Shown piece by piece: positions 7,025 through 61,241 of a stretch of 64,000 nucleotides of DNA. The notes beneath the pieces were generated by a model. That model was not told the origin of the DNA, did not search any database, and saw nothing but the letters and a program-made list of their open reading frames with translations. Source of the stretch: Dimorphilus gyrociliatus (taxonomy: Eukaryota; Animalia; Annelida). The stretch is from positions 3,529,891 through 3,593,890 of the forward strand of contig CAJFCJ010000002.1 in NCBI GenBank assembly GCA_904063045.1, read 5' to 3'. The translations under genes were made by a program, and so were the position numbers. The stretch's first letter is position 1; every line of letters starts with the position of its first letter.

Positions 7025-10000
7025 CTTGGTATGCTTGGCTTTTGATGATTTCTTTTGATGAAACTTTATTACAAATTTTTATTATTTGACGAAATTATAA
7101 ATTAATTAAAATACAAAAGACTAAAAAATAACGTACTTGAATGATTATTTAGCATGTTGACAGAGGGAGAATAAAGATGAAAAAGATTCTAGATTAATAG
7201 AGACTTACACTCAGAAAGTAGGGAATATGAGAGTAACATAGTATTTCTTATATCCATTTCTGTCACTTCAAATAGAGTCAATTGGAAAAGGATGTCGGAA
7301 TCTTTATATTTTATACAATATTTAATTTGTCATCTTCCTTTACTACCCTTGTCATATATATTTAGTTTTATACTATCCAACTATTTATATATTTTGGAGC
7401 GTTTTTTGACATATATAACTTTACATTCATTACCTTTAATTTAATATTGAATTACACGAGTAGAACGGATTAGTTAAGAATTATCGTATATCATTTTCAA
7501 AGGTCAAATGTGGTTATACTTTTCTCCTATTTTAAACGATAAGATGGAAACTGAAAAATTTAAGAAAACAGTCTCAAAGAAAATCGAGAATTACTATCTC
7601 TTTTGCTAAAGCGAAATTATAGGCTAAAAAGAAATTTGTAAGAGATCAGTTTTCTTTTCTATTTTTCTTTTTTTTTTTTTCTGCAACTCTGGGACAATAA
7701 ATTATGAATAAAGACAGTGCTTAAAACTATATTGGATAGTTGAAAGAGGTGAAATGCCTACTTTTTATACTAGGATGTGTCTAATTGACGGCAATCGGCG
7801 TCACTATCGCCTTTTATCGATAACCCTAGGGCGGTGTCTAAGAAAGAGACGCCTAGTCAGCCTGGTTTGTATTGCATATAAAAATAGTCAAAGACAAATG
7901 GGCCGTAACGCGATATTTGTGAATGGCCTATAACGTGGTCATATTGGTTGGAATTGTGTGAAATATGAATAATAATTTAATTACAAATAATACAACTTGT
8001 TAAATAATGATTCCCGTGCAATAGGCCTCGTAAGTAGCTTCAAAAATCATAATAGTGGAATGAATGTAGTAGGCTTTGATAGGGCGCCATTTTTTCCATC
8101 CCAGTTTCTTCGATCAATTTTGTTTTGAGGCGTCGGAAGAACACGAATGCAAACAATCGGTTGCCGTTTGTTCGACGCTAATAAACGGCGCTCTTATTTG
8201 AAAATGGGTTTTCGGTTTCGAATTTGAGGTGGTTAGGCTAGTGGAATTTTTGTTGGATGAGACGATTTTTTTGCCAAAAACTATTCATTCACTAAATGGA
8301 AAGCAAGAGAAAAAACCGCTAAGAGACGTACAAATTCCTTATAAAATAGTAAATTTTCGGACCTAAATCCTTAGGCTGGGGAAGTTTAATAGCAAAACCT
8401 AAAAACTTTGACACTCTACATTTTCCTTTTATGGAATGAAATAATTAAAACTCCATTAAATCTTTTACATGAAATTTTACTTAAGGGTCGAGTATTGGAA
8501 TAAAATTTTGACCCTTTCCCCATCCAAATAGCGATCTATCAATTATTTCAGATATTAGATAGACTCAAACCATTGATAAATTAGTCGCCTTTAACCGACA
8601 TACTTATTTATAAATTGTGTTTTGTGTTCTCCTTTATATCTGTCTAAATGATATCAATTAATCAATAATGTAAACTATTCCACGTAATAATTTAAGCAAA
8701 AAACAGTAAAGGAACCGCAAAAAAATATTCAAACAGCTAAAACGCATTTACTTTATTTTAATTTATTCAAGGTTTTCCTGGAAAGGCGTCTTTCAGGCAC
8801 TTTTAGTTTTATCGTATATTGAATTTTACCAAGTACGAATTCTAGAAAGTTCCATCTAAAAGAGAAAACCTATTCGTAAAAGACGAGAAATGAATAAAAT
8901 TTCACAGTAAAATATATAAAATAAGAGAGAATATGCTCATTTCTCGTAGAGATTCAAATAATCGCTTGCGATAAAGCGTACTTATAAGAGAATATACCTA
9001 ACAAATGCTCTTTAGAAAATTTCTAAATCTTTATTTTTTCCATGTGAACTATTTAGGTGGGTTTCGTTTTTTTTATTATTTTAGTTGGTGGAAATAGTTC
9101 TTTCTGGAATGGAAATTTCTAAAATGCATTTGAAATTTGAGAAAAGATACCAAAGTAATATAAAAGAGATCCACTCGCCATGTATCTAAATTCTAAGGCT
9201 ATGCAGCTGTTACCCAAAAAATCCATACAACAATCGTCACATTAGACAATGATTCATTAAAAAGAACATAGTCAACAATACTTAATTTAACTAGATACCT
9301 GTATTACTTGAAAATCTCTAAAATGATTTGCAATAAAATTTATCTTATTTCTTAATGTTACACAGAATGATCCTTAAACGATTAAACGAACATAAAAACC
9401 AATTTAACTATTACTTTATTATTATATTTATTTTTTCAAAAGTAGCTAAAATAACTCACCTGACAAACACAATAAAGACAAAGCTATAAACCATTGAGGT
9501 TTTCTCATTGTGATGCTTTGTTTGCTACAGTTTTGTCCTGACCGCGCGATTGCTGTACTAGAGACAGTTTGCTGCGGGCTTCTGTAAAAGAACTTGATTT
9601 GCATAATTTATGTGACTAATAAACCATACGATTAAAGCCAATCATTACCAAAAGTATATACTATTATTATTAGGTCTATGATAGATTATTAAACTTTGTA
9701 AAATTATGTAAATTTAATTTATGAATATTCATGACGTAGTTGGCTTAAGTGTTCTTATCTGTTAAGATGTCCGCTCAAATTTAGCTCAACCAATGAAGAA
9801 ACTGGAAAATTATTGCTGTAGAAATTGGTAAACAAATAATAAGAGACGATTCTAAATGGATTGAAATAGACGGCAGCCTGTCCTTATTAACCCCAACTGC
9901 AAAGGCAGAATCCAGCTAGTTTTTACAGACTCTTCGCAGCACTGTCTACTAAAAATTAGCTTTATAGCCAGATTTTTTTTGCCGAATATCGCCTATAGGA

Positions 10001-40940: not shown

Positions 40941-42154
40941 ATGACCAGCAGGAAACTTCTTAGAACACTAATTGATTATGAGGAAGAAGCCCAAAATATA
41001 CTGAATGAGCCTGTTCGTTCTTTTTACTACAGTGGAGCCGAATACGGTAAAGCCCATAGAAGGAATATAAAAGCACTGCAAAAGTAGTATTTAAATATTA
41101 GAATCTCTCTTATTCTTATCAAAATTTCGTTTTCTCCTTGATTTTAATTTAAAGAATTTATTTGTGTCCTAATATATGCGTGGATGTAAGTGAAAGAGAT
41201 ACCTCAGCTAATTTCCTGGGATATTCAATACCTATACCTTTGGGAATCAGTCCAACGGCACAGCACAAACATGCAAACTTTGAAGGAGAATTAGCAACAG
41301 CAAGAGCAGCGGCTTATCATAATACTCCCTACGTAATGAGCTTATTTTCAAACATTTCAGTTCGGCAGGTTATACATGCTGTACCGGGAGTTAAAATTCT
41401 TATTCAATTACAATTTATGAAAGACAGAGATATCCTAAGCAAACTGCTAAATCAATTTATCAATGATGGAGTAAAGGGAATATGTCTTACTCTCGATATA
41501 CCTATTATTAATCCCACAAAGCCTGGTTTACTATCTCTAGCTTCAAAATATTCGATACCGAACATTCCAACAGAACTTCGCGAAAAGACCAAGACATCTC
41601 TAACATTGTTTGACAACGATCATATAACCTGGGAAGATGTAGCGTGGTTTATATCTAAATCTACTGTACCAGTCATAGTTAAGGGTGTTTTATCACCTAA
41701 GAATGCCTTAGAAGCTATAAATATTGGAGCAGCAGGTATATGGATATCCAATCATGGTGGTCGCCAGTTGGCGGATGCTCCACCAACTATAGAGGCTCTT
41801 AGAGTAATTGCTCCTCTTGCCAAAAAAGCTAAAATTCCTTTATATATAGATGGTGGAATTAGAAGTGGCGGTGATATACTCAAGTGCTTAGCCTTAGGTG
41901 CCGATATTGTTTTTCTTGGTAGACCCATTATAAGTGGATTAGTTGTTGGAGTAAGTCATAAAAAATAACATTAAATAGTATTCCCCAACGAATTATCTCT
42001 AAAACTTAAATTACATTAACAGGGTTACAAAGGAGTAGTTGACACTTTGAATATAATAAAAAGAGACTTCGAAGCTAATATGGCTATGTGTGGATTTAAG
42101 AATGTGAAAGAGATTAACGAAAAATGCTTATGGGAAAATATATCAAAAATATAG
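40941..42154 (+). CDS. HAO1: FMN-dependent alpha-hydroxyacid oxidase (glycolate oxidase/HAO family). Exons 40941-41083, 41155-41950, 42023-42154
   Basis: DYEEEA..FYYSGA, PLGISPTA..GELATARAA, VIVKGV, SNHGGRQL, DGGIRSGGDILKCLALGADIVFLGRP. C-terminal SKI is a PTS1-like signal. Assignment to HAO1 versus HAO2 is not resolved. Confidence 0.9.
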
Positions 42155-42297: not shown

Positions 42298-45200
42298 TCA
42301 ATCAACTAAAAAGAAGGTTTTCAACTCTCCTTTTCCTTTTACTCTTACAAGACCTCTGGCTTCAAATTTATAATTGAATTTCTCTAAAATCTTCGCCGTT
42401 TCTTCAACTACCTGAATTTTACCCATCTGTCCAGTTGATTCCATTCTTGAAGAAACGTTTACCGTATTTCCCCAAATATCATAATGGGGTTTAGTCACAC
42501 CAATCACTCCTGCTAGGACGGGACCATGATTTAGACCTATTCTGAGCATAAAGTTATTAAAACTCTGAGAATTAACCCTATCTAAGACAACTTTCATCTG
42601 TTTTGCAAATTCAACTAAGTCGGCCAAATGCTTCCATCTTTCTGCATTATTTGCTATATTTAATCCACTAGCTGCCATATAAGTAGAATTGATAGTCTTA
42701 ATTTTAATTACAGATTCAAATCTTGATTCGGATGTCAATAGGACATCGTAATCTGATAATATCTCATTCAATAATCGAATACATTCTAACCCGTTATTAT
42801 TCACAGAATCTTCAGTATAAAAATCGTTAAAGTTAGGACAGGCTGCGAATAAGACTCCAACTTCTTCGTATGCGTGAGAATATAGTTCATCTTCTGTTCT
42901 ATTGGAGCCAACAAAATCCTTTGCAACGTGATGAGGAAGAATATTGTAAATTAATGATTCGTTCTTTCGTTTCATTTCGTCAATTTGCGACCGAGCTTCA
43001 TCAACCTCCATTCGATGTATAAAAAACTTTCTTAAAGTTACATCATACTTGATTGATAAAACTATAAAACACAAGAATGAGGAGAATAGTATAGCCATAG
43101 ATTCAGTTGAACGATCTAAACTGCTGAATATGACACATAGAGAAAAGGATATGAGAATTTTCCATGGAACATTCAATAACGGCAATAAAGCTGTAGCAAA
43201 AAAGATAAGAATACAATTCGATACTGCAAAAGGAACTTTAACTCCAGAATTTTTTGCTAATATAACAATAGATGGCCATGCTATTAATAGAGTCATAGTT
43301 CCCAACCAAAACTGACTGAACCATCTTCGAAAAAGAAATTTCTTACAAACTGCGACAATAGGCCTAGGAAATCTCTATATTAAAGAAAAATAGTACTTTA
43401 AAGGGTTTATAAGATGATTTTTACAATTTACTATAATAAATTAAATGCATAATAAAAACATACCTTGTGTAATACGCCGGAAAAATTGAACGTAATCATA
43501 ATAACCAAAATTATAAGACTTGCTACATGTAGAGCTGTGTAAAAAAGCTTGTCCTCCGAAAGTAGCAGAACAGATATCGTTATAACAAATAATATTAAAG
43601 GTGAAGAAGTGGATATTAGACAGTTGTGATAATATCTGGATTGGATGTAAGTCTTTTCCAATTTAACATCTTTAAACTGAAATATAGGCCTAAGCTTCTT
43701 AAAGATATTTCTGAAATGAGACAAAAGAAACAATTATCGTTTGATAGCTAAATATAATATTATCCATAATTATTATTATTTTTGCCCGAGGATATTATTT
43801 TAATTAAACAATATAGTACAAGATTTAATTAATGGAAAAAAACTACTAAAAGATCCTGTTATTTCAGATCTCTTATACAAATACATAAAATAAATGAAAA
43901 TGATATGCAAAAACAGAATAACAACGTACATTCCCCATTCTCTGTCTTGTAAAGCATCAACAATTTTGGCAAAGCTAAGTTCTTGATTCGAACTTGGATT
44001 ACTTTCTATCACAGTTGTCTCATTCACGCTTGTTTCGGTTTTATTCTTTCCTTGTTGTTTAATATCATCTAATGTACCTTTAGGAAATTTTTTAAGGACA
44101 CTCTTTACTAAAAATGTCTTGACATTCTCTCGTTTCAATTCCTCTTCTCTACTTTCACCATCGCCATTTTCTAATTCAAATTCTTTTTTTAAAAAATTTG
44201 CAGTTGCTTGCGATACGTGAACCCTTCCCGGCAGACCCCCACTTTCCATTTTATTCGCCAGAGTAACATCTTTGCCCAAGATATCGTACTGCCATCGATG
44301 CTGGCCTAGAACACCGCCTAAAATCGCTCCAGTATGAATGCCAACCCTCATGTTGACGCCGCTCTGAGTTTTCTTTCTAACTTCAGCTATAGCAACAACC
44401 ATATCCAACCCCATATGGACGCATAGAACAGCATGATCAGATCTCGGAATTGGGCATCCAGCTATACAGTAATAACAATCTCCCAATATCTTTATTCTTA
44501 ACTGATGATATTTCTACAAAAAATTCATTAAAGCTTAATCGGAGAATACTAACAGAAAGAAGAAAAAATAGTACATTATACATAAATATTTACGAAAGAC
44601 AGCCTTTAGGTTTATAAAATCGATAACAAACTATCTTAATGTTATTTACGTATAAAATCTATATAACAGCCATTACTAAGATATACACTATCAATAATAA
44701 ATTATAGAATACAATGATATATATATATATATATATATATATTCCCTTAAGATTACTTTCTAATATACTAAATTCTTTTTTAAGATGAAACTGACTATCC
44801 TTAGTTTTCCAAATGTTTTCTTTTTTCTCACTGTTATTCGTACATATTAATGCGTTACAACTTATACACAGACAAGAGCACTTTGATAATCATACACAAA
44901 CCTGTCATACTCTAATAGCTATTATACAATCTTAGACGCTTAGATGCAGCAACGTAATATTTCTTTAAAAATCACATCTTTTCTACTGAAATATTCTTTT
45001 GCTCTCTTCTTCACTCTTCCTATATATTGCATATATATTATATATATTTATATATAGATTACTCACGTGTGCTAGTTTGTCGAAAGTGGCAAACAGGTCA
45101 TTAAGAATCTTGATAAGTTCACTTGCTGATACTCGAGATGATAGTGCAGTAAATCCGACAATATCAGCAAACAATATGCTGTAAAAAGAAATAATATTTC

Positions 45201-46200
45201 TTCATTTTATCAAACTTCGTTTTAATGAATAGGAAATAACTGTTAATCTAAGGATAATTTTTAAATCAATTAATTAATTCCTTTCTAAATCCCTTTAATC
45301 ATGTTCATCTTATTCTTTTTACCTGACATTCTCATGCCGATTCATATATATCTTACGAAACTGACTATCAACTGTTATACCAAGATCTTTGACCATTTCT
45401 TCGGCAACGTGTTTTGGTAGAACTGACAATAAGAGTCTTTCTTGCTCTTTTGTTGCTTCTTCTATTAATATATTTGCAGATAAACTCTTTTTTGTTTCAA
45501 TAAACGCCTTTCGTTGAGAAGCCTCACTGGTAAAAAACACAATTATTGAGGAAACACAAACTGCAATATAACTTAGCAAAGTTGAAATAACACTTTCCAG
45601 CGTAGAGTAATCTCCATTTTTTGTTAAATAGAATATCAGTGAGTGAACTAGGCATGTTATTAAGCTTGTTAGCAAGCAGGACAATATCTTGAGTGGTAGG
45701 CCTATATAAATAGAGTACAAACTTAATGTAACATATGCCAAGTTATAAGGTTCTGTGTAAGCTGTTGATATGGCTGTCTGGACAACCAGTAAAATCCAGG
45801 TGATGTAAGGATATAATATTAAAGAGAAGAATCGTAGTTTTCGAAAGTATCGGTAAATTGCCATGCAGGTTATATTAACAAATATCATAACTGAGACTAC
45901 ACTAACAATTATCACATGCTTGTTGGACCATTCCCAAACTTCGCTTCGTATGATCAAAGAGAAATTTAATATTAACAGAATAGCAGAAACGCTTAATGGC
46001 GATTTCGTTATAGCAATATATTGAGAATATAATTTTTCCAGATCATCATCTTCAAATTTCGATAGACCAAATGTAGAAGTTCTTTTGAAAGCCGGGTCTT
46101 TTAACTCCTCTTCAGCTCTTAAATCTATTCTGGAAGTTAATAGTTGAGATAGTCGAGACGGTGGTCTGTCGCTTGGATAAACTTTTGCATCATTAGACAT
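42298..46200 (-). CDS. ADCY3: Transmembrane adenylate cyclase, type 3-like, about 965 aa (exons 46200-45323, 45178-45067, 44513-43930, 43710-43464, 43374-42298)
   Basis: M1-C1-M2-C2 layout. C1 has [27 protein letters not shown] and [12 protein letters not shown]; C2 has [44 protein letters not shown] and [20 protein letters not shown], which are AC3-type motifs. All splice phases are consistent. Confidence 0.95.
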
Positions 46201-49200
46201 TGTTATTAATTGCCGAGTTTACCGGATAGTGGTCGAGAAGTGAATGTCGCGCTGTTTTTTTTTCATATCCATGGTTACTGGCATAAACTACGTTAGATGA
46301 TGGCGCTTTTACTCGATTAGCTTACAGAACGATTTAATAAGCTAAGTGATACTTTCTTTTCCCTATCTCTTTCATTGCTTTCAATTTTGACTATTTTGAT
46401 ATTTATTTTGTTACAAGCACAATATATCCAGGCTACAATTCAAAAATTACAAAATAGAAATTTCATTAATTTAGTAAAAGTGCACAAATCATTCTGTAAG
46501 GAATAAATAGTTCTTTAATGTATAAGATTTAATTAGTGTAAAGGTTAATTACTTGAAGCTTGAATACAATTGACCATCTATTTAGTAGTTTACTAATTAT
46601 ATTTTATTGACTTGAATGTGATAATTATTATGTGTTTGTATGTACATAATCGTTTTGTATCCATAGAGATCTATTAAACTATTTTTTTTAAATAATGTAC
46701 TAGGTAAGGAAATAGTTAAGGTGTCTATAGATAATAATTGTTAATAATAGTTGCTGCATTATACAATATACAAAATATATAGTACATATACAGTATTTAC
46801 TTTTTCTGAGATGTGGGTTTGTACTGTATATAAATATATATATTATTCTTTTTTTACCTTACATCTCATAATATCTCAAACAAGCAAATTATTCTATTAA
46901 GTGGAAAGAATTTAATGAAAAATAATCCTTTTATCGCATTGATTCTTTCACCTTTAACTGATGGTCAACGCTTTTAAGTTAAGGTACATTTTAAAGAAAA
47001 CGCCTTGCCTTCGAGACGTACAAGATCTATAAAAGGTCTTTTCATATATCGTTTGACGTATTTTATTCACACACATTTATAAGATCTCAATTTTCTCTTA
47101 CGTAAACAAAACTATATTAGCATTCTAAGCTAATGGAATTGTTCTGATATAAACGTCTCTATGGATACAACCAGTTGTGCTCCATTATAAAGTAAAAAGA
47201 TACTTTGAAGATTTTTTTAAAACAATCTGTTATCCTTGAACAATTGCTTATGGTTTTTTTCCCGGAATGTTCATTAAAAAAAGGCTTAGCGAGAAAGTTT
47301 ATTTCCCCGTACATAATACTTTGTAGGCATACCATATTGCAGTGGGAGAAAGACAGATTTATTTACATTCGTATCTGCCCTTCTATACGTTTCCCTTCCT
47401 ATTCATAGATAATTTATAAGAATATTTCAGAAATAACTTATATAAATTCTAGTATAAAGCTTTAGATATTATGTTTACATGTCTACTATACAGCAATATA
47501 ATACATAACTATTCTTCTATTAACAACTATATTACATAAGTAATATTGATAAAACAAAACATCCCTTACCTTTTTAATACATTAAACCCATATAAAAAAA
47601 ATAAAAGTTGCAATCAATAATCTAATTTCATAGTTTACTTTTTTCTCGCTTTTTCATTCTATCTACTCTTTCAATGAGGTCCTATTATTTTTTTTTTATA
47701 GCCACATGTACCAATGGAACTTGTTCTTTAATTAAATATCTGTCTTATAATCGGACATTTGATCAAGGTTATCTTATTTCTCATATTCCCTTTCCTATAT
47801 TAATAGCAATATAACTTATCTATTTTTATATGTTACATAAAAATTACTTGTACTTTGATATTTGAAAAAAACACATCATTAGAAAACTTATAGAGAGTAT
47901 TTGAATCGTTAATTATACTATTTTCTATCCGATTTCTTGGATAAACAATTATATTTATGGCTATCCAATTAAAAAGTGTTAGTTTTTGAAACATTCTAAT
48001 TTAAATTGTTACTCTTCAGCTTTAGATGAAAAGATTACATCACTTGTAGAACAATAGTGGCACCTGGTGACTGAAATAGACATTTAGTATTTTAGAGAAA
48101 TGGCTTAAATGATCTTTTCTAGATTAAAATGGATGTTTCTTAGTGTCAATAAGTTGAATAATTGTATGAAATAGATATTATAAGGAAAATTTACGTTTAT
48201 AGAATATATATATATAAAGCCCTGGATTAGATGTAAAATGGATGGGTTGAAGGATTTTTTAATCTATTTTTGAAATGACATCAATTTCAATAAATCACAT
48301 ATAAGGATATTAATAAGAGAGTGTAGGAGCGAGAAAAAACAAATTGAAAGGATAGAAAGAAAGCATTCTTCCATTGATTACTCTCGTCTTTATCATTGCT
48401 TCGTTTATCGAATAAGTAATGGTTGAATAACGAGCTCAGGGGAAAAGTGACGAATACTTTGGGTCACGCTCGCCTTCGTTAATCTTTCAAACGAAATAGA
48501 CTAGTAGCGACAATTATTCACATTTTGCTCACATCTCTATAATATTGTTTAATATCAGTGTTTTATTAAAATTCCAATAACAAATCATATTGTTGATAGA
48601 ACGTCACAGCACAAAGAAAATACCCAACTCTTCAATAGTTTGTAATAATTGGAAGAAATTCAAATGGTTGCTGCAACAATCAAGGGATCCTTACAGGCTT
48701 CTGCATAAAATATGTGGTAGTTTTTGCTTCAAAGTAACTAGGTCTCTCTCTTGAATTTTTTATTTAAAATCAATAACAAATTTATAAATGTTCCTTTTTC
48801 TTAAAGCAATCAAAATCTTAACCTTATGAAATAAACAGTACTGTTTCTAAGTTACTAAATACGTTACAATTAGTCTTAAACGCTTTTTATCTGAAAGCCA
48901 TTTTAAAATTATTTATATCCTAAATTAATATTACAATACTATATCTCTCACTTCATAATTTCAAACTAAATTATTACTTATTCAGCTAACCCAATGGATC
49001 TTTTATCATATTATTCATTTATTAACAATTTTTTCTTTTTTGTATCTTTCCTGGGATGCAATAAAAAAAACTATTTTCTTCTTGAATATTCATAATATTT
49101 TATTTAAATATAATTTAAATACGCTGTATATTTATCCTGTTGTTTATAGATGCAATATATATATGTACATATATTTCATAAAATAATGAAAATTCATAAA

Positions 49201-49399
49201 TTTTAGCCTTTCTCAAGTAAAAATCTTTTGTTATAACATCTTTATTTAAGTTATTACATATATTTCATTTGATCAAGTTTAACACATATGACAAAAACGA
49301 AAGGTTTATATCTCATCATGTAAATGACCGCGGCTGCATCACGTGATTATTATGTAGATGTTTCTTTACAGTCCGAAGTCAAAACCAAGAAGTGGAACT

Positions 49400-51193
49400 A
49401 TGAGTCCCGTCTCTCTCTTTTTTGCCATTTTGTGCGTCATATATTTAGGTAAGTTTTTTGATGATTATGTTTTATTATTAGTTAAATAATTAGAAGCACA
49501 AGACTTATCGAAATAAGAGGATAAAACTTAATGACTATGATAAAGAATTTACTGTAAAAAAAGGAAAAAAGAAACTCAAATCAGAGACAAGAATACAATC
49601 TATGAATGGAAAAGGAGGAACGAACTAGCATTTTTTTATTTGTAGATAGTTATTTTTAAAGTTACTTAGATATCAAATACTATTTTTTAAAAACTGATAG
49701 AAATGAAAGAAGTTTAACTTTAACCCTAATTTCTTTTGATCTCATAATTAATTAGCTTTCATTCTCTAACAAAATTTAATTTAAGGCCATTAAAGGGGAA
49801 GAGCTAAGAAAGTGGGAAATAAATTCTTAAAAACGGTCTGAGACAGAAGAAAATAGATGACGTAGTCAGCTGAATAAGTAAACTCTCCAAGGCACTCATG
49901 TCACTTTACATTTTCAACCTTGCAGTTAAATCTCTTTAAGTCAAAAAAAAATTTTTAAATCTCCAAAATGTTCCTGTTGAACAACTTAAAATCCTTTTTG
50001 AATCTTATATCTATAACAACGATATAGAGTTATATTAATTTCAATACAATGACTTCATTATATATAGGTCGGAGACATACACACAGTATATATTTTCTTT
50101 TTTACTTTCAAAAAAAAAGAGCTAACCATTCTGGGAAAAGAAATCTAGGGTTGTTGAGGGACAGTGCCGTTTTGGGAATTTTAAATATTTTATGCGGGCT
50201 ATCTAGATTAGACTCATTTTATCCAATTTCTTTTTAATTTTTAATCATTTTTCATCTTTTTTTATTCAATACAATATTTAAGAAATAATTTTATAGGCCA
50301 TTACTCAACGGCTGAAGAGAAACATTACGATGTAACTACTATCCCTGTAAGTTCATTTTTATCAACTTGTTTCTATAATTTGTTCTAGCAAAATTGGAAA
50401 TTTACCTTATTCAAGTTAAAACTGTGGAAAGGAGCTCTTATAAATATTTAGCTTGGTTTTTTTTCTCCCAATTAAGGTTTCACCATATATTTCTTATCTA
50501 AATGAAAAGAAATTAGTAGGAAATGCACAGTTTGAAGGTTATTTAATTGACTTGTTGGAAAAATTGGCAAAGTTTGGAAACTTTACATACAGTTTAAGAA
50601 AAGTTCAAGATCGAAAATATGGTCAAAAAAAAAATGGCGAATGGGATGGAATGATTGGAGAACTTGTTAACAGAGTAAGTATGAAATTTATAAATATTAG
50701 ATAAATAATGAATGAAATGATTATGAAAATATCTTTTTCTACGTTAAGAAAGCAGATATGGCTCTTGCACCTCTAACAAGATCTGATTTGAGAGCGGCAG
50801 CTGTCTTGTTTACCATACCATTTCGTAATGTAAATTTAAATTTCTTGGTGAGAAAGAATTTCAAGGAAAAGAAAATTGATGAATTAGCAAAAGATAAGAA
50901 TGTTAAGTTCTTTGTAATTAAAGGGGGTACTACAAGTACTCGCTTCAAATTTGCTACCGATCCAGTGGAAAAACGAATATGGAGAAGATTGCAAAAGACT
51001 GACAGCGAATCGTTTATATCAACTGTAAAACAGGGAGTAGATAAGGTTTTAGAAGATAATAATGTTGTTTTTATCGTTGAAAGTCCAATGGCCGAATATT
51101 GGGTATAGTTATTTTATTAATCAAAGTTAAATTCTTTTTTATTAAATTAATTAATTAATTAATTAATTAATTGATATAAATATGCAAATACTG

Positions 51194-51224
<31 letters not shown>

Positions 51225-51490
51225 TGCTCTAGGAAAATAAAAATTGCGATCTGAAGATTTTAAAGGATGTTATCGAAACAAAAGACTACTATTCCCTAGC
51301 AGTTAGAAAAGACTTGATAGGATTAAAGGATACTCTTGACTTAGGTCTTTGGAGATTGAATCAAGGAAATGAGTTAAAGAAACTATGGGTTAAATGGTTC
51401 TCATATACAACATGCTCTGGATCGATGACCAAGTTTAACATATTTGGTTTGGGAGTTACAACTCTAATAATAATGATTATAGCTCTATGA
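49400..51490 (+). CDS. 302-aa channel-less ionotropic glutamate receptor ligand-binding-domain protein: signal peptide + fused S1/S2 + hydrophobic C-terminal tail (exons 49400-49448, 50297-50346, 50477-50674, 50749-51102, 51233-51490)
   Basis: S1 motifs FEGYLIDLLEKLA, DRKYG..WDGMIGELV and ADMALAPLT..R run directly into S2 motifs IDELAK..GGTTS..W, GVDKV..FIVES..EYW..CD and LKKLWVKWF..C. All GT-AG junctions are in phase. Exons 1, 2 and 5 are missing from the ORF track. Confidence 0.9.
51146..51172. repeat. (TAAT)n tetranucleotide repeat in intron 4 of the iGluR-LBD gene
   Basis: attaattaattaattaattaattaatt. Confidence 0.85.
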
Positions 51491-52484
51491 AGCGTAATTT
51501 TTTATATCTTATTTCGCTTCTGGCGTGGTAGAAACTTAGATGTTAGTTATAATCTTCTGCTGCTTCTTTCTTTCTTTAATATTGTTACAAAAGTGACTGG
51601 GAATATCTCTACTTTACATCAATAGTAACAAAAATGTATATCGAGTATATATATGAGTATTGTAATTATCATTCAATTAGACATTTCCCTTAACAATAGC
51701 CGTTAAGCTCCTAGAAAACATATTTAAACAATAATATGCATATAGTATACTAAATTTGTATAGAAGTTTTTAAAAATAGGCCCATGTCAGAGTTGTCTTC
51801 ATATATATTTTCTATTGTTGTGACTACTGCCACTACTGTTGTGCTTAGAAAGATTGCATAGATAAAATTCATTCATATTTAATACAGATATATAGAATTC
51901 TTTCGTCTATGATTTACATAATTCCTTTCCATCTATTGAGAATATCTTAAGATGGATAATTTTACTCTACGAATATGGGCTTTATAATTTTTCATTTAAA
52001 GAGAATTTATTATCTTTATATTTGTATACGAGTCTTATAAATGATGAATTAGACTTACGCTAAAGGTTGGTTGGATTTGGAAATGTCAGTCAGAGTGATT
52101 TTTTACCAATCCTTCTATTATAATACAACATTGGAACGCTTAATGTCTTAAGATGACACTACTCAAAATAATATCTTTTATTTTCCAAACCTACTTTTAG
52201 TATTCTCTTTATCGAATTTTCTATTTTTCTTGACGGTAAGGGGGATTTTTCATTGCTTAAAAATCTAATTTACAACATTGAAATCCCCGCCAATATAATC
52301 TATAATTAATTTTAATATATGAAAAATGTATTAATAGCATTAATTATATAAATTAATTGCTTGTTAACGTGATTTCCAACATTCTATTACAACGAATTTA
52401 AAATAAATATTTCTCTAAGTGTGTGCTATAATCTTGGAAACAACAGCATGGGATTGACCAAGCTCATTAGTTTTTGTTTGTATT

Positions 52485-59415: not shown

Positions 59416-61241
59416 ATGCGATCTCTCTTCATCTTGATAGTGTCTATTATTATTCTCGACTTTGTTAAATCCAAAGATATTATCATCGTTGGAGCGGGAA
59501 TATCAGGAATCTCAGGTTAATTTGTCTAATGTTGTTGAATATTCTAAAGAGATTTTCTTTATTTGAGAGATCGAGTAAAATATTTATTCCTTCTATTCCT
59601 TAAAATGGTTTATTACTGACAGCTGCTAGAATTTTGATAAATGGAGGTCATAATGTGACTGTTCTGGAGGCGAGGAATCGTGTTGGTGGAAGAATTCATA
59701 CTGTGGAAGTTAATAATAGTAAATCTATATTTTTTTGGGGTATCTACTTTATTGTTTTTGTCTTTATTTAGATAAGGTAGATTTGGGAGCATCATGGATA
59801 CATAAAGATAATGATAATCATCCTATCTATAAGCTAGCAGAAAAATTTAATTTAAAGACTAAAGAAATAGCTTCTTCTTATAAAGTATTTACTAAGAATG
59901 ATCAAAATGAGAGAATAGAAGTTAATTCTAGTCTTTTGGATGAAAAGTATGAAGAATATATCCAGGTTAGCTAATTAATAAGGATACAAAAAAGGCAAAT
60001 ATGTTTATTTTTTAAATTACAGTTAATTAAATCTCTTGCAAGTGATTCTTCAAAATTATCTTCCAACATATCGGTTTACGATTATTTAAAGAATAAAAAT
60101 CTACTTAAAAGCATAACTGAAAATAAATTTAATGGATTCTTTTTAAGTAGAACGGAGATTGATTTTAGTGCTTCGTTTAAGAGTTTGTCAGCGAAACTTA
60201 CAGGAAAAAGATTCACAAAGAGTTCGGATAAGAATGAAAATGGCGAAAAAACACCAGTATTAATTTTTCCAAATGGTTATCTTGATATTGTTTCAAAGTA
60301 AATTTAAATTTCTAATAAGTAATTGTAGGAATAATGTTATTTAAATTTTTCATTAAGTCTGATCAAAGGCGTTGGAAAGGAGAAAGTAGTTAAGGTTTCG
60401 TTAGAAAAGGTTGTAACAAATGTTACTGTGAAGGATAAAGTGAGTGTTAAAACTAAAGATGGATCTTCTTATACTGGAGATTATGTAATTATCACTATTC
60501 CATTGGGAGTTTTGAAAAATGATACTATTACCTTTAATCCTCCAATTTCTGAAAAGAAAAGAGACGCTATAAATAGCGTTGGTTTTGGAACATTAAATAA
60601 AGCATACTTGGAATTCAAAGTACCTTTTCCAGATAATGAAACACACATTTATTATTTTATGCAAAATAAATTCCAAAATCGCAACTATTTCAATGACTTT
60701 TATAACCTTGGAAGATGGATAGACAAGTCAGCATTTATGTCATTATCACCTTCTACCGAAGATCAAAATTCCGAAGAAATCGATGATACAAGTATTACTG
60801 AAAGCTGCTTAACAAGATTGTCGATTATTTTCAATAAATCAATAGTTGAGCTGAAAGAAAGTTGGAATAGTACAATAAGAACGAGGTGGCAAGCAGATGA
60901 ATTTAGTCAAGGATCATTTTCGTATCCCCAAGTTGGTTAGTTTAACCTTTCTTTACGTGTTGTTTGTAATAATATATAAGAAAACTATATAATGTTTAGG
61001 TACGACTCTTGAAGATTATGAGGAGCTAAGAAGATCCCATCAAAAGTATGTTTTATTTGCTGGTGAGCATACCTCGAACCAAAACTATGGAACTGTTCAG
61101 GGAGGATATAATAGCGGTGTAAAGGCTGCTTGCGAAATTGATAAAAAGCTCTGCTCAACTTCTAGTGCACCAGTTTTTAAAAGTTTAATAACTTTCTATT
61201 CAGTCATAACTTTATTAATTTATATTATACAGTTCCTCTAG
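59416..61241 (+). CDS. 494-aa flavin-containing amine oxidase (polyamine-oxidase-like) with signal peptide and hydrophobic C-terminal tail (exons 59416-59515, 59623-59718, 59772-59965, 60023-60297, 60358-60935, 61000-61241)
   Basis: IIIVGAGISG..LEARNRVGGRIHT..DLGASWIH, DYVIITIPLGVLK, GFGTLNKAYLEF, RWQADEFSQGSFSY, LFAGEHT..GTVQGGYNSG. All splice phases are consistent. Confidence 0.93.

What the first reader, a model, noticed from the sequence alone, without database searches (positions are those of the whole stretch)
49400..51490. Channel-less iGluR ligand-binding domain with intact glutamate site and GPI-like tail: candidate glutamate-binding protein analogous to AChBP
Seen in sequence: S1 ends FTIPFRNVNLNFLVRK and S2 begins KKIDELAKDK inside one exon (junction about 50848-50880), so there is no genomic room for the M1-P-M3 pore. 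There is no amino-terminal domain (signal peptide then HYSTAEEKHYDVTTIP), and the protein ends CSGSMTKFNIFGLGVTTLIIMIIAL-stop with no cytoplasmic residues. Established knowledge: GluA2 binds glutamate through Y450, P478, T480, R485, S654/T655 and E705, with a C718-C773 disulfide. The aligned positions here are Y (DRKYG), P, T and R (APLTRSDLR, same spacing), T/T (GGTTS), E (VESPM) and both cysteines. The layout equals the engineered S1S2 crystallography construct but occurs naturally, with introns, so it is not a bacterial periplasmic binding protein contaminant. Inference: a GPI-anchored or shed protein that buffers, senses or presents glutamate, or acts as a decoy or auxiliary partner of iGluRs, like molluscan AChBP for nAChRs. 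I know of no characterised animal protein of this design but cannot run a search to confirm novelty.
Basis: partly seen in the sequence, partly recalled or inferred. Interest (0 to 1): 0.9.

Follow-up and report, generated by a model that had tools for sequence, protein, structure and literature searches.

The report
Natural pore-less glutamate-receptor binding protein
This annelid gene makes only the ligand-gripping clamshell of a glutamate-receptor ion channel, with an intact amino-acid pocket, no pore and a lipid-anchor-like tail; it is transcribed, spliced and conserved, and it belongs to an uncharacterised protein family that I could not find described in the searchable literature.

Summary
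Window 49400-51490 (+) holds a five-coding-exon gene, annotated but uncharacterised as DgyrCDS1714 of Dimorphilus gyrociliatus. It encodes 302 aa: signal peptide, iGluR S1, a direct two-residue S1-S2 junction inside exon 4, S2, then a 16-residue hydrophobic end.

- **Expression:** spliced transcript contigs in four public runs carry exactly this structure, with nothing between S1 and S2.
- **Fold:** the protein aligns end to end with engineered kainate/AMPA S1S2 cores (E 3e-41). The AlphaFold model (pLDDT 90.5) superposes on them (TM 0.85-0.92).
- **Pocket:** all canonical glutamate contacts and both cysteines are kept.
- **Selection:** an orthologous contig gives dN/dS of about 0.2.

Many pore-less relatives exist: annelids, a mite, a tardigrade, a fly and marine metatranscriptomes. 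An AU test rejects a single origin for all of them (p 0.0004). It does not reject one clade for the hydrophobic-tail group holding this gene, Owenia and Helobdella. The nearest channels are mollusc ATD-less 'U1-like' receptors.

GPI anchoring, glutamate binding and the buffer/sensor role remain inferences. Nine literature searches found no description. This scan had already flagged at least six sister genes on other DNA of the same genome, so this is another member of that family, here with an intact glutamate-type pocket.

The parts
48590..48741 (+). 3' part of a 5'UTR exon used by at least one transcript; the donor GT is at 48742. It has no in-frame ATG and holds two short uORFs (ATG at 48663 and 48711). 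Its 5' limit was not determined.
   Evidence: The loose end of X2 contig 4 maps to 48710-48739; sequence read.
49372..49448 (+). Exon 1: 28 nt of 5'UTR after the acceptor AG at 49370-71, the start codon at 49400, and the signal peptide MSPVSLFFAILCVIYL(G).
   Evidence: joint 49445/8 to 50294/7 seen in X2, X4 and X7. The annotated ATG at 49358 lies inside the 5'UTR intron of X2 contig 4.
50297..50346 (+). Exon 2: end of the signal peptide, the probable cleavage region (HYSTA|EEK) and the first LBD strand (VTTIP). There is no amino-terminal domain.
   Evidence: The intron position VTTI|xxPY is shared with the Owenia LBD-only gene and the Liolophura channel gene.
50477..50674 (+). Exon 3: S1 lobe D1, including the Y450-equivalent (DRKYG) and an NFT sequon.
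   Evidence: Pfam Lig_chan-Glu_bd E 1.3e-19; joint 50346 to 50477 in three runs.
50749..51102 (+). Exon 4: the end of S1 (APLTRSDLR, matching P478/T480/R485), the S1-S2 junction, and the first half of S2 (GGTT matching G653/S654/T655; VESPM matching E705).
   Evidence: Collinear with S1S2 crystallisation constructs; uninterrupted in transcript contigs X2#7 and X4#8.
50851..50874 (+). The S1-S2 junction (RK-NF-KEKK), where M1-P-M3 sits in channel subunits. Two residues replace about 100-130 residues.
   Evidence: Channel relatives have a 98-104-residue insert at this point.
51233..51415 (+). Exon 5, first part: the second half of S2, with the C718 and C773 equivalents, the Y732 equivalent and the KWF motif.
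   Evidence: The exon 4-5 joint is seen in X1, X2 and X4 contigs (table 8).
51416..51490 (+). GPI-signal-like tail SGSMTKFNIFGLGVTTLIIMIIAL plus the stop codon. Small residues directly follow the last cysteine, then a 5-residue spacer and 16 hydrophobic residues to the C-terminus. The position corresponds to M4.
   Evidence: The tail is conserved in orthologues (P0197, L001). It is modelled as a helix at residues 301-315 of P0191 and aligns with M4 of full-length receptors.
51491..51700 (+). 3'UTR; the transcript contigs run about 200 nt beyond 51700.
   Evidence: table 8.

Best explanation
DgyrCDS1714 is a functional gene for a cell-surface amino-acid-binding protein derived from an ATD-less AMPA/kainate-type iGluR subunit.

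**Origin (inferred).** An internal genomic deletion removed M1-P-M3 and fused the S1-end exon to the S2 exon. M4 was shortened to a 16-residue hydrophobic C-terminus that has the form of a GPI-attachment signal.

**What is shown.** The mature protein is a monomer-sized bilobed clamshell of about 270 residues, and it cannot conduct ions. It retains every canonical alpha-amino-acid and gamma-carboxylate contact.

**What is inferred.**
- It most likely binds L-glutamate or a close analogue by clamshell closure.
- It is held at the outer membrane leaflet.
- There it acts either as a ligand sensor or presenter for a membrane partner, or as a local glutamate buffer. The first role would resemble bacterial binding proteins docking on transporters or chemoreceptors, and GPI-linked co-receptors in animals.

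**Basis of each step.** Architecture, expression, fold, pocket conservation and purifying selection are shown. GPI anchoring, ligand identity and physiological role are inferred.
For: - Gene model with canonical splice sites.
- Spliced transcript contigs in runs X2, X4, X7 and X1 carry exactly these joints, at depths of 158-235 against 4-6 in introns. Exon 4 is uninterrupted.
- Pfam PF10613 scores 110 bits and there is no PF00060 hit.
- phmmer against the PDB: GluK4 S1S2 (5ikb) at E 2.8e-41, collinear over residues 43-292.
- AlphaFold2 gives pLDDT 90.5 and pTM 0.81.
- Foldseek against the PDB: GluK2, GluA2, GluRIIB and KaiR1D LBDs at target-normalised TM 0.85-0.92 and rmsd 2.1-2.6 A.
- Pocket residues Y, P, T, R, G, T, T, E, Y and both cysteines are kept, and are also kept in the orthologue L001.
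- dN/dS is 0.215. pN/pS is 0.36, with a bootstrap 95% CI of 0.28-0.44. Introns 2-4 are essentially unalignable.
- The same tail pattern (small residues after the last Cys, a short spacer, a hydrophobic end, no cytosolic residues) recurs in more than 15 divergent relatives whose tail sequences are unrelated.
- Intron positions are shared with a mollusc ATD-less channel gene and with the Owenia LBD-only gene.
Against: - No ligand-binding, localisation or GPI experiment exists, and no GPI predictor was available.
- The tail is unusually well conserved between orthologues (pN 0.07 against 0.22 for the core). That is atypical for a cleaved GPI signal and could point to a retained membrane helix. 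Synonymous sites and the 3'UTR are also conserved there.
- The E402/T686 inter-lobe lock of GluA2 is not kept (V and I).
- The loop before Y732 differs from that of channel subunits, so affinity and selectivity could differ from glutamate.
Confidence: 0.7

Rival explanations
1. It is a membrane-inserted auxiliary subunit. The C-terminal helix is a retained, shortened M4 that stays in the membrane. It lets the free LBD associate with pore-forming iGluR complexes or other receptors and modulates their gating or ligand access.
For: - The tail is positionally equivalent to M4, and full-length receptors align through residue 315.
- It shares a GLG motif with M4 of the nearest channel relative P0051.
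- The tail is more conserved between orthologues than the LBD core.
Against: - It has only 16-18 hydrophobic residues and no cytosolic or positively charged flank.
- Small residues (CSGS) sit exactly where a GPI omega site would be.
- Tails of other family members are not conserved in sequence.
- The L483-equivalent of the LBD dimer interface is polar (D126; S, D or E across the family).
Confidence: 0.15
2. It is a shed or secreted soluble glutamate decoy that works like molluscan AChBP, released into the extracellular fluid to capture transmitter.
For: - Other pore-less relatives end directly after the last cysteine and must be soluble, for example Bradysia P0010, Dermatophagoides P0124 and Paramacrobiotus P0127.
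- GPI proteins can be shed.
Against: - This member, its orthologues and its nearest LBD-only relatives keep a hydrophobic tail.
- An LBD monomer binds one ligand with typically micromolar affinity, which makes bulk buffering costly.
Confidence: 0.1
3. It is a decaying relic, an annotation artefact or an assembly artefact of a former channel gene, and has no function.
For: - The protein sits on a long branch of the tree (1.72 changes per site).
- No close paralogue was found in the databases.
Against: - The ORF is intact.
- The spliced mRNA appears in four runs from at least three studies.
- pN/pS is 0.36 and never reached 1 in 2000 bootstraps.
- The orthologue has the same exon structure and the same pocket.
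- The AlphaFold model is high-confidence.
Confidence: 0.03
4. It is a bacterial periplasmic amino-acid-binding protein that entered by contamination or horizontal transfer.
For: - It gives a weak SBP_bac_3 Pfam hit (48.7 bits).
- It has the same size and fold as bacterial binding proteins.
Against: - It has four coding introns plus one UTR intron, and two intron positions are shared with animal iGluR genes.
- PF10613 far outscores PF00497.
- It nests inside animal iGluRs, and the bacterial rows form the outgroup with 99% support.
- Its GC content is 29%, like the flanking animal genes.
Confidence: 0.01

Closest known systems
Engineered S1S2 ligand-binding cores of AMPA/kainate receptors (crystallisation constructs such as GluA2 1ftj, GluK2 1s50, GluK4 5ikb)
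   Same: The domain boundaries are the same to within a residue. S1 is joined to S2 by two residues (NF here, the GT linker there). The fold is the same (TM about 0.9), as are the pocket residues and the disulfide.
   Different: This protein is natural, encoded by a spliced gene. It carries its own signal peptide and a hydrophobic C-terminal tail, and it is about 30% identical in sequence.
ATD-less iGluR subunits (vertebrate kainate-binding proteins; mollusc 'glutamate receptor U1-like' proteins such as Liolophura XP_064603248 and Haliotis XP_046328737)
   Same: They are its nearest channel relatives in the tree and also lack an ATD. Two intron positions are shared.
   Different: They keep M1-P-M3, a full M4 and a cytosolic tail; this protein has none of these.
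Acetylcholine-binding protein (AChBP) of molluscs and annelids
   Same: The evolutionary logic is the same: the extracellular ligand-binding part of a ligand-gated channel existing as a separate protein without a pore.
   Different: It belongs to an unrelated superfamily (Cys-loop). AChBP is a soluble secreted pentamer, whereas this protein has a membrane-anchor-like tail and an LBD fold that binds ligand as a monomer. No functional data exist here.
Bacterial periplasmic amino-acid-binding proteins (SBP_bac_3, e.g. glutamine- or arginine-binding proteins)
   Same: It has the same class II binding-protein fold and size, and the arginine that clamps the alpha-carboxylate. It is a free binding module that could hand ligand to a membrane partner.
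   Different: This protein descends from an animal iGluR, not directly from bacteria. It has the iGluR-specific disulfide and the PF10613 signature.
Uncharacterised LBD-only database entries (Helobdella HELRODRAFT_72217 and HELRODRAFT_167133, Owenia CAH1773235, Capitella R7U7X4) and the sister genes flagged earlier by this scan in Dimorphilus
   Same: They share the architecture: signal peptide, S1-S2 without a pore, and a hydrophobic end. One clade is not rejected (AU p 0.48).
   Different: Identity is only 28-34%, and no close paralogue was found. This member keeps the complete glutamate-type pocket.

Membership tests
iGluR ligand-binding domain (Pfam Lig_chan-Glu_bd / PBPe) | Profile match above the curated threshold | tested here: met
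   PF10613 scores 110 bits against a cut-off of 30, E 9e-32.
iGluR ligand-binding domain (Pfam Lig_chan-Glu_bd / PBPe) | Bilobed S1/S2 clamshell fold | tested here: met
   The AF2 model has pLDDT 90.5. Foldseek target-normalised TM is 0.85-0.92 with rmsd 2.1-2.6 A against GluK2, GluA2, GluRIIB and KaiR1D LBDs.
iGluR ligand-binding domain (Pfam Lig_chan-Glu_bd / PBPe) | Alpha-amino-acid contacts (R485, T480, E705) and the C718-C773 cysteine pair | tested here: met
   R128, T123, E224, C236 and C292 of P0191. Across 54 LBD-only relatives R is kept in 52/52 and C in 51/51.
Glutamate-selective AMPA/kainate-type pocket | Gamma-carboxylate contacts S654/T655, plus Y450 and Y732 | tested here: met
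   T174, T175, Y95 and Y251 are present. Actual ligand binding is not testable here.
Channel-forming iGluR subunit | M1-P-M3 pore domain (Pfam Lig_chan, SYTANLAAF motif) between S1 and S2 | tested here: not met
   There is no PF00060 hit. Exon 4 runs from S1 into S2, and transcripts carry it uninterrupted. No pore exon lies in the 64-kb window.
Channel-forming iGluR subunit | Full M4 helix followed by a cytoplasmic tail | tested here: not met
   Sixteen hydrophobic residues end the protein. Channel relatives have a linker of 20-40 residues, an M4 of more than 21 residues and a charged tail.
GPI-anchored protein | N-terminal signal peptide, plus a C-terminal signal made of a small omega/omega+2 site, a short spacer and a hydrophobic end with no cytosolic residues | tested here: inconclusive
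   The pattern is present (signal peptide; C-S-G-S, MTKFN, then 16 hydrophobic residues) and recurs in relatives. No trained predictor was available.
GPI-anchored protein | Release by PI-PLC / a lipid-linked C-terminus | not testable with these tools
   This needs an experiment.
AChBP-like soluble decoy | Secreted, soluble, no membrane anchor | tested here: not met
   The hydrophobic C-terminal tail is conserved in orthologues. Other pore-less lineages without a tail would meet this feature.
Bacterial SBP_bac_3 binding protein | Bacterial gene context and phylogenetic placement among bacterial proteins | tested here: not met
   It has spliceosomal introns shared with animal iGluR genes and nests within animal iGluRs.
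Lophotrochozoan hydrophobic-tail LBD-only group (Owenia, Helobdella, Dimorphilus) | Forms one clade with those proteins | tested here: inconclusive
   The quick tree places it in an 88%-supported group that also holds four channel subunits. The AU test does not reject one clade (p 0.48). The branch is long.

The most novel reading that the evidence does not exclude
Pore-less, secreted or lipid-anchored iGluR ligand-binding domains form an unrecognised and repeatedly evolved class of extracellular amino-acid or transmitter-binding proteins across protostomes (annelids, mites, tardigrades, flies, marine zooplankton). Members with an intact pocket, like this one, would act as glutamate sensors, presenters or buffers at synapses or chemosensory surfaces. 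That would make them the glutamate-system counterpart of AChBP, and a natural, ready-made S1S2 for structural pharmacology.
Probability: 0.4. Interest if true: 0.8.

Novelty: new variant of a known kind. Interest (0 to 1): 0.68.

Why it matters
The isolated S1S2 domain has been the workhorse of glutamate-receptor structural biology for 25 years, but as an engineered object.

A natural, expressed, selected version would show that the clamshell has biology of its own, apart from gating a pore. This one has the same boundaries, an intact pocket and a membrane tether. Its pore-less relatives arose more than once.

It raises testable questions:
- Do invertebrate nervous or sensory tissues use tethered binding domains to shape glutamate or amino-acid signals?
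- With what partners do these proteins work?

It also points to a blind spot. Surveys of iGluR evolution filter on the pore motif. Ramos-Vicente et al. 2018 (PMC6307864) discarded sequences lacking SYTANLAAF, so such proteins were excluded by design.

Tried and rejected
- **Protein query by reference.** Searching with the spliced protein was not possible by reference. I used exon 4 alone for the exhaustive representative search. I then added exon pieces to an alignment to pull the window's own protein out of the big collection, which worked and gave P0191.
- **Profile search.** The search with 26 LBD-only proteins was capped at 8000 candidates and returned mostly partial channel models, so it added little on distribution.
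- **P0191 alone** found only itself, so there is no close paralogue in the databases.
- **P0197's contig** could not be fetched.
- **Literature.** Nine searches found no description of natural LBD-only iGluR proteins. A tenth attempt failed on a term-length rule. I also read the Dimorphilus genome paper and Ramos-Vicente 2018. 'Poreless' hits concern insect sensilla.
- **Conserved intron-1 block.** Rfam and consensus folding gave nothing.
- **Rejected readings.** I considered and rejected a bacterial contaminant, a pseudogene, an assembly collapse, and alternative splicing from a larger channel gene.
- **Channel versus LBD-only column comparison**. It suggests relaxed conservation of the DSKG loop and the L483 position, but it is confounded by phylogeny and I give it little weight.
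Full report
**1. The observation**

Reading the sequence and assembling the exons gives five coding exons on the + strand:
- 49400-49448
- 50297-50346
- 50477-50674
- 50749-51102
- 51233-51490

Every intron is GT..AG, and the ORF is 302 aa. The protein begins with a hydrophobic signal peptide (MSPVSLFFAILCVIYLG). About ten residues later it enters the first strand of the ligand-binding domain (VTTIP), so there is no amino-terminal domain.

Exon 4 runs without interruption from the end of S1 (APLTRSDLR...FLVRK) into S2 (KEKKIDELAKD...GGTTS...VESPM). The junction lies at about 50851-50874.

The protein ends CSGSMTKFNIFGLGVTTLIIMIIAL-stop. The only hydrophobic segments are the signal peptide and this tail.

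Pfam gives Lig_chan-Glu_bd at 110 bits (cut-off 30) and a weaker SBP_bac_3 hit, but no Lig_chan pore domain. tblastn of 150 iGluR relatives against the whole 64-kb window hits only this gene, so no pore exon is hidden nearby.

**2. It is expressed in exactly this form**

Laying public runs on 49300-51700 shows spliced contigs in four runs.
- X2 and X4 carry all four coding joints (49445/8 to 50294/7, 50346 to 50477, 50674 to 50749, 51103 to 51234). Their depths are 235 and 158, against 4-6 over introns.
- X7, an RNA-seq run, carries the first two joints.
- X1, a metatranscriptome, carries the last joint with a few differences.

Exon 4 is contiguous in every contig, so no transcript places M1-M3 between S1 and S2.

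One X2 contig adds a 5'UTR exon ending at 48741 and spliced to 49372. That splice removes the ATG at 49358 used by the public annotation.

The protein is in the databases as DgyrCDS1714 of Dimorphilus gyrociliatus, 316 aa. It is identical to my model apart from a 14-residue N-terminal extension.

**3. What the protein is**

phmmer against PDB sequences aligns residues 43-292 of P0191 collinearly with the engineered S1S2 cores.
- GluK4 (5ikb): E 2.8e-41.
- GluK1-3, Drosophila KaiR1D and GluA2-4: E 1e-38 to 1e-35.

The natural 'NF' sits where the constructs carry their artificial 'GT' linker.

An AlphaFold2 model built on 54 relatives has mean pLDDT 90.5 and pTM 0.81. Foldseek superposes it on GluK2, GluA2, GluRIIB and KaiR1D LBD crystal structures. 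Target-normalised TM is 0.85-0.92 and rmsd 2.1-2.6 A over about 255-265 residues.

Against AlphaFold DB, full-length receptors align through residue 315. The C-terminal helix therefore takes the place of M4.

Mapping through a GluA3 S1S2 sequence (P0044) gives the following equivalences, with GluA2 numbering first:

| GluA2 | P0191 |
|---|---|
| Y450 | Y95 |
| P478 | P121 |
| T480 | T123 |
| R485 | R128 |
| L650 | I170 |
| G653 | G173 |
| S654 | T174 |
| T655 | T175 |
| E705 | E224 |
| M708 | M227 |
| Y732 | Y251 |
| C718 / C773 | C236 / C292 |

From established knowledge of AMPA/kainate LBD structures, these are the contacts for the alpha-carboxylate, the alpha-amino group and the gamma-carboxylate of glutamate. 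A glutamate-like ligand is therefore the best sequence-based inference.

There are differences. The E402/T686 lock is V/I. The L483-equivalent of the dimer interface is D126. The loop before Y732 (DSKG in channels) is ETKD.

**4. Selection**

A 1.6-kb genomic contig from another sample (L001) is an orthologous locus.
- It has the same exons and intron positions.
- Protein identity is 63.5%.
- It has the same pocket residues and nearly the same tail.

Nei-Gojobori estimates over 285 codons are dN 0.245, dS 1.14 and dN/dS 0.215. The uncorrected pN/pS is 0.36, with a bootstrap 95% CI of 0.28-0.44 that never reaches 1.

Introns 2-4 are only 33-46% identical in global alignment. Neutral sites are therefore saturated, and the true ratio is if anything lower.

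The gene is under purifying selection. The tail is even more conserved (pN 0.07), but so are its synonymous sites and the adjacent 3'UTR.

**5. The tail**

In the nearest channel relatives the last cysteine is followed by three elements:
- a linker of 20-40 residues
- an M4 of more than 21 residues
- a charged cytoplasmic tail

Here, and in more than 15 divergent pore-less relatives, the layout differs. The cysteine is followed at once by small residues (CSGS, CGGSSAG, CSAAYG, CSGSAN...). A short spacer follows, then 12-18 hydrophobic residues that end the protein. The tail sequences are otherwise unrelated.

That is the textbook form of a GPI-attachment signal. It is the most economical reading, but no predictor or experiment was available. 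The high orthologue conservation keeps a retained membrane helix alive as a rival.

**6. Relatives and origin**

The exhaustive search with exon 4 returned 195 proteins at E up to 0.001. Among the 150 listed, plus later finds, 86 match across the junction in one collinear stretch. About 40 of these are complete pore-less proteins of 260-360 aa with signal peptides.

Named examples:
- Helobdella robusta (two proteins)
- Owenia fusiformis
- Bradysia coprophila
- Dermatophagoides pteronyssinus
- Paramacrobiotus metropolitanus

Many others come from transcript-sized contigs of about 1 kb in Logan, JGI metatranscriptomes and the MERC marine catalogue. Contigs of that size cannot encode a channel.

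The complete proteins fall into three tail types:
- a hydrophobic, GPI-like end
- a short amphipathic aromatic end
- none (the protein ends after the cysteine)

On a tree of 122 LBD cores (quick IQ-TREE, weak deep resolution) the pore-less proteins fall into several groups. An AU test rejects holding all 40 together (delta lnL 169, p 0.00044). The pore therefore appears to have been lost more than once.

This gene lies on a long branch inside an 88%-supported group. That group holds 19 hydrophobic-tail proteins, including those of Owenia and Helobdella, and four channel subunits. Three of those channels are mollusc ATD-less 'glutamate receptor U1-like' proteins. Holding the 19 together costs only 0.9 lnL (AU p 0.48), so a single origin for that group is compatible but not shown.

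Gene structures agree with this.
- The intron positions VTTI|xxPY and GELxxx|xADxA are shared by this gene, the Owenia pore-less gene and the Liolophura channel gene.
- In the channel gene, M1-M3 spans two exons with an intron in the pore region.
- In the pore-less genes, the S1 end and S2 form one exon.

This indicates a genomic deletion from exon into exon rather than exon skipping.

**7. Surroundings**

The neighbours are functionally unrelated:
- an adenylyl cyclase on the minus strand (42.3-46.2 kb)
- an FMN-dependent dehydrogenase (41.2-42.0 kb)
- an amine oxidase exon (60.4-60.9 kb)

There is no second LBD gene in the window and no close paralogue in the protein collection.

**8. Mechanism and rivals**

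Shown:
- The protein is a secretory-pathway protein consisting of an iGluR clamshell only.
- It is expressed and under selection.
- Its amino-acid pocket is intact.
- It has no means of conducting ions.

Inferred:
- It binds glutamate or a close analogue.
- It is tethered to the outer leaflet by GPI.
- It works as a sensor or presenter for a partner, or as a local buffer.

Rivals:
- A retained M4-like helix making it an auxiliary subunit of receptor complexes (about 0.15).
- A shed soluble decoy like AChBP (about 0.1).
- A functionless relic (about 0.03).
- A bacterial contaminant (refuted).

**9. Novelty**

Nine full-text searches found no paper on natural LBD-only iGluR proteins. The Dimorphilus genome paper does not mention them either.

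The large iGluR survey of Ramos-Vicente et al. 2018 discarded sequences lacking the SYTANLAAF pore motif. That would have excluded them. The library searched lacks most subscription journals, so absence is not proof.

The gene and several homologues are already public as uncharacterised entries. This scan had already flagged at least six sister loci in the same genome. Follow-up agents on those loci reached the same reading: expressed, conserved, family not found in the literature.

I therefore rate this a new variant of a known kind, namely the iGluR superfamily without its channel. This locus is a further member, notable for its fully canonical glutamate pocket.

Noticed in passing
window 50130-50296 (3' end of intron 1) and L001:1-166: This non-coding block is 78-83% identical between the two orthologous loci. 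Introns 2-4 are 33-46% identical and the CDS is 71% identical. It has no Rfam hit and no covariation. A low-depth contig (X2 record 6, 49974-50323) runs through it. It may be an enhancer or an alternative promoter.
   Followed up: partly
window 48590-48741 and 49358-49399: A 5'UTR exon spliced 48741 to 49372 removes the ATG at 49358 that the public annotation (DgyrCDS1714, 316 aa) uses as its start. The 302-aa form starting at 49400 fits that transcript. Two short uORFs begin at 48663 and 48711.
   Followed up: partly
window 51416-51560 and L001:1285-1420: The tail codons and the first part of the 3'UTR are more conserved at the nucleotide level (pS 0.33 in the last 25 codons) than the rest of the CDS (pS 0.62). 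This may reflect an RNA-level constraint at the 3' end.
   Followed up: no
window 42298-46200 (- strand): Exons of a membrane adenylyl cyclase (AC_N and two Guanylate_cyc catalytic domains) lie directly upstream on the opposite strand. An FMN-dependent dehydrogenase exon lies at 41162-41968 (+) and an amine oxidase exon at 60428-60940 (+).
   Followed up: no
proteins P0007, P0012, P0021, P0035, P0056, P0078, P0092, P0150, P0155 (metatranscriptome / MERC contigs): This is a separate, well-supported clade (96%) of pore-less LBD proteins. They end in a short aromatic amphipathic motif (e.g. WGLNKFKF, LIGWLSSML, FMSWIQGFF) instead of a hydrophobic tail. The P0012 cluster has 12 near-identical members from different samples. 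Organism and function are unknown.
   Followed up: partly
P0002 (Ixodes scapularis KAM7307429.1, 847 aa): This protein was the best full-length hit. It shows one S1 and two S2-like stretches (residues 366-522 and 597-753). This is either a tandem duplication of S2 or a gene-model artefact.
   Followed up: no
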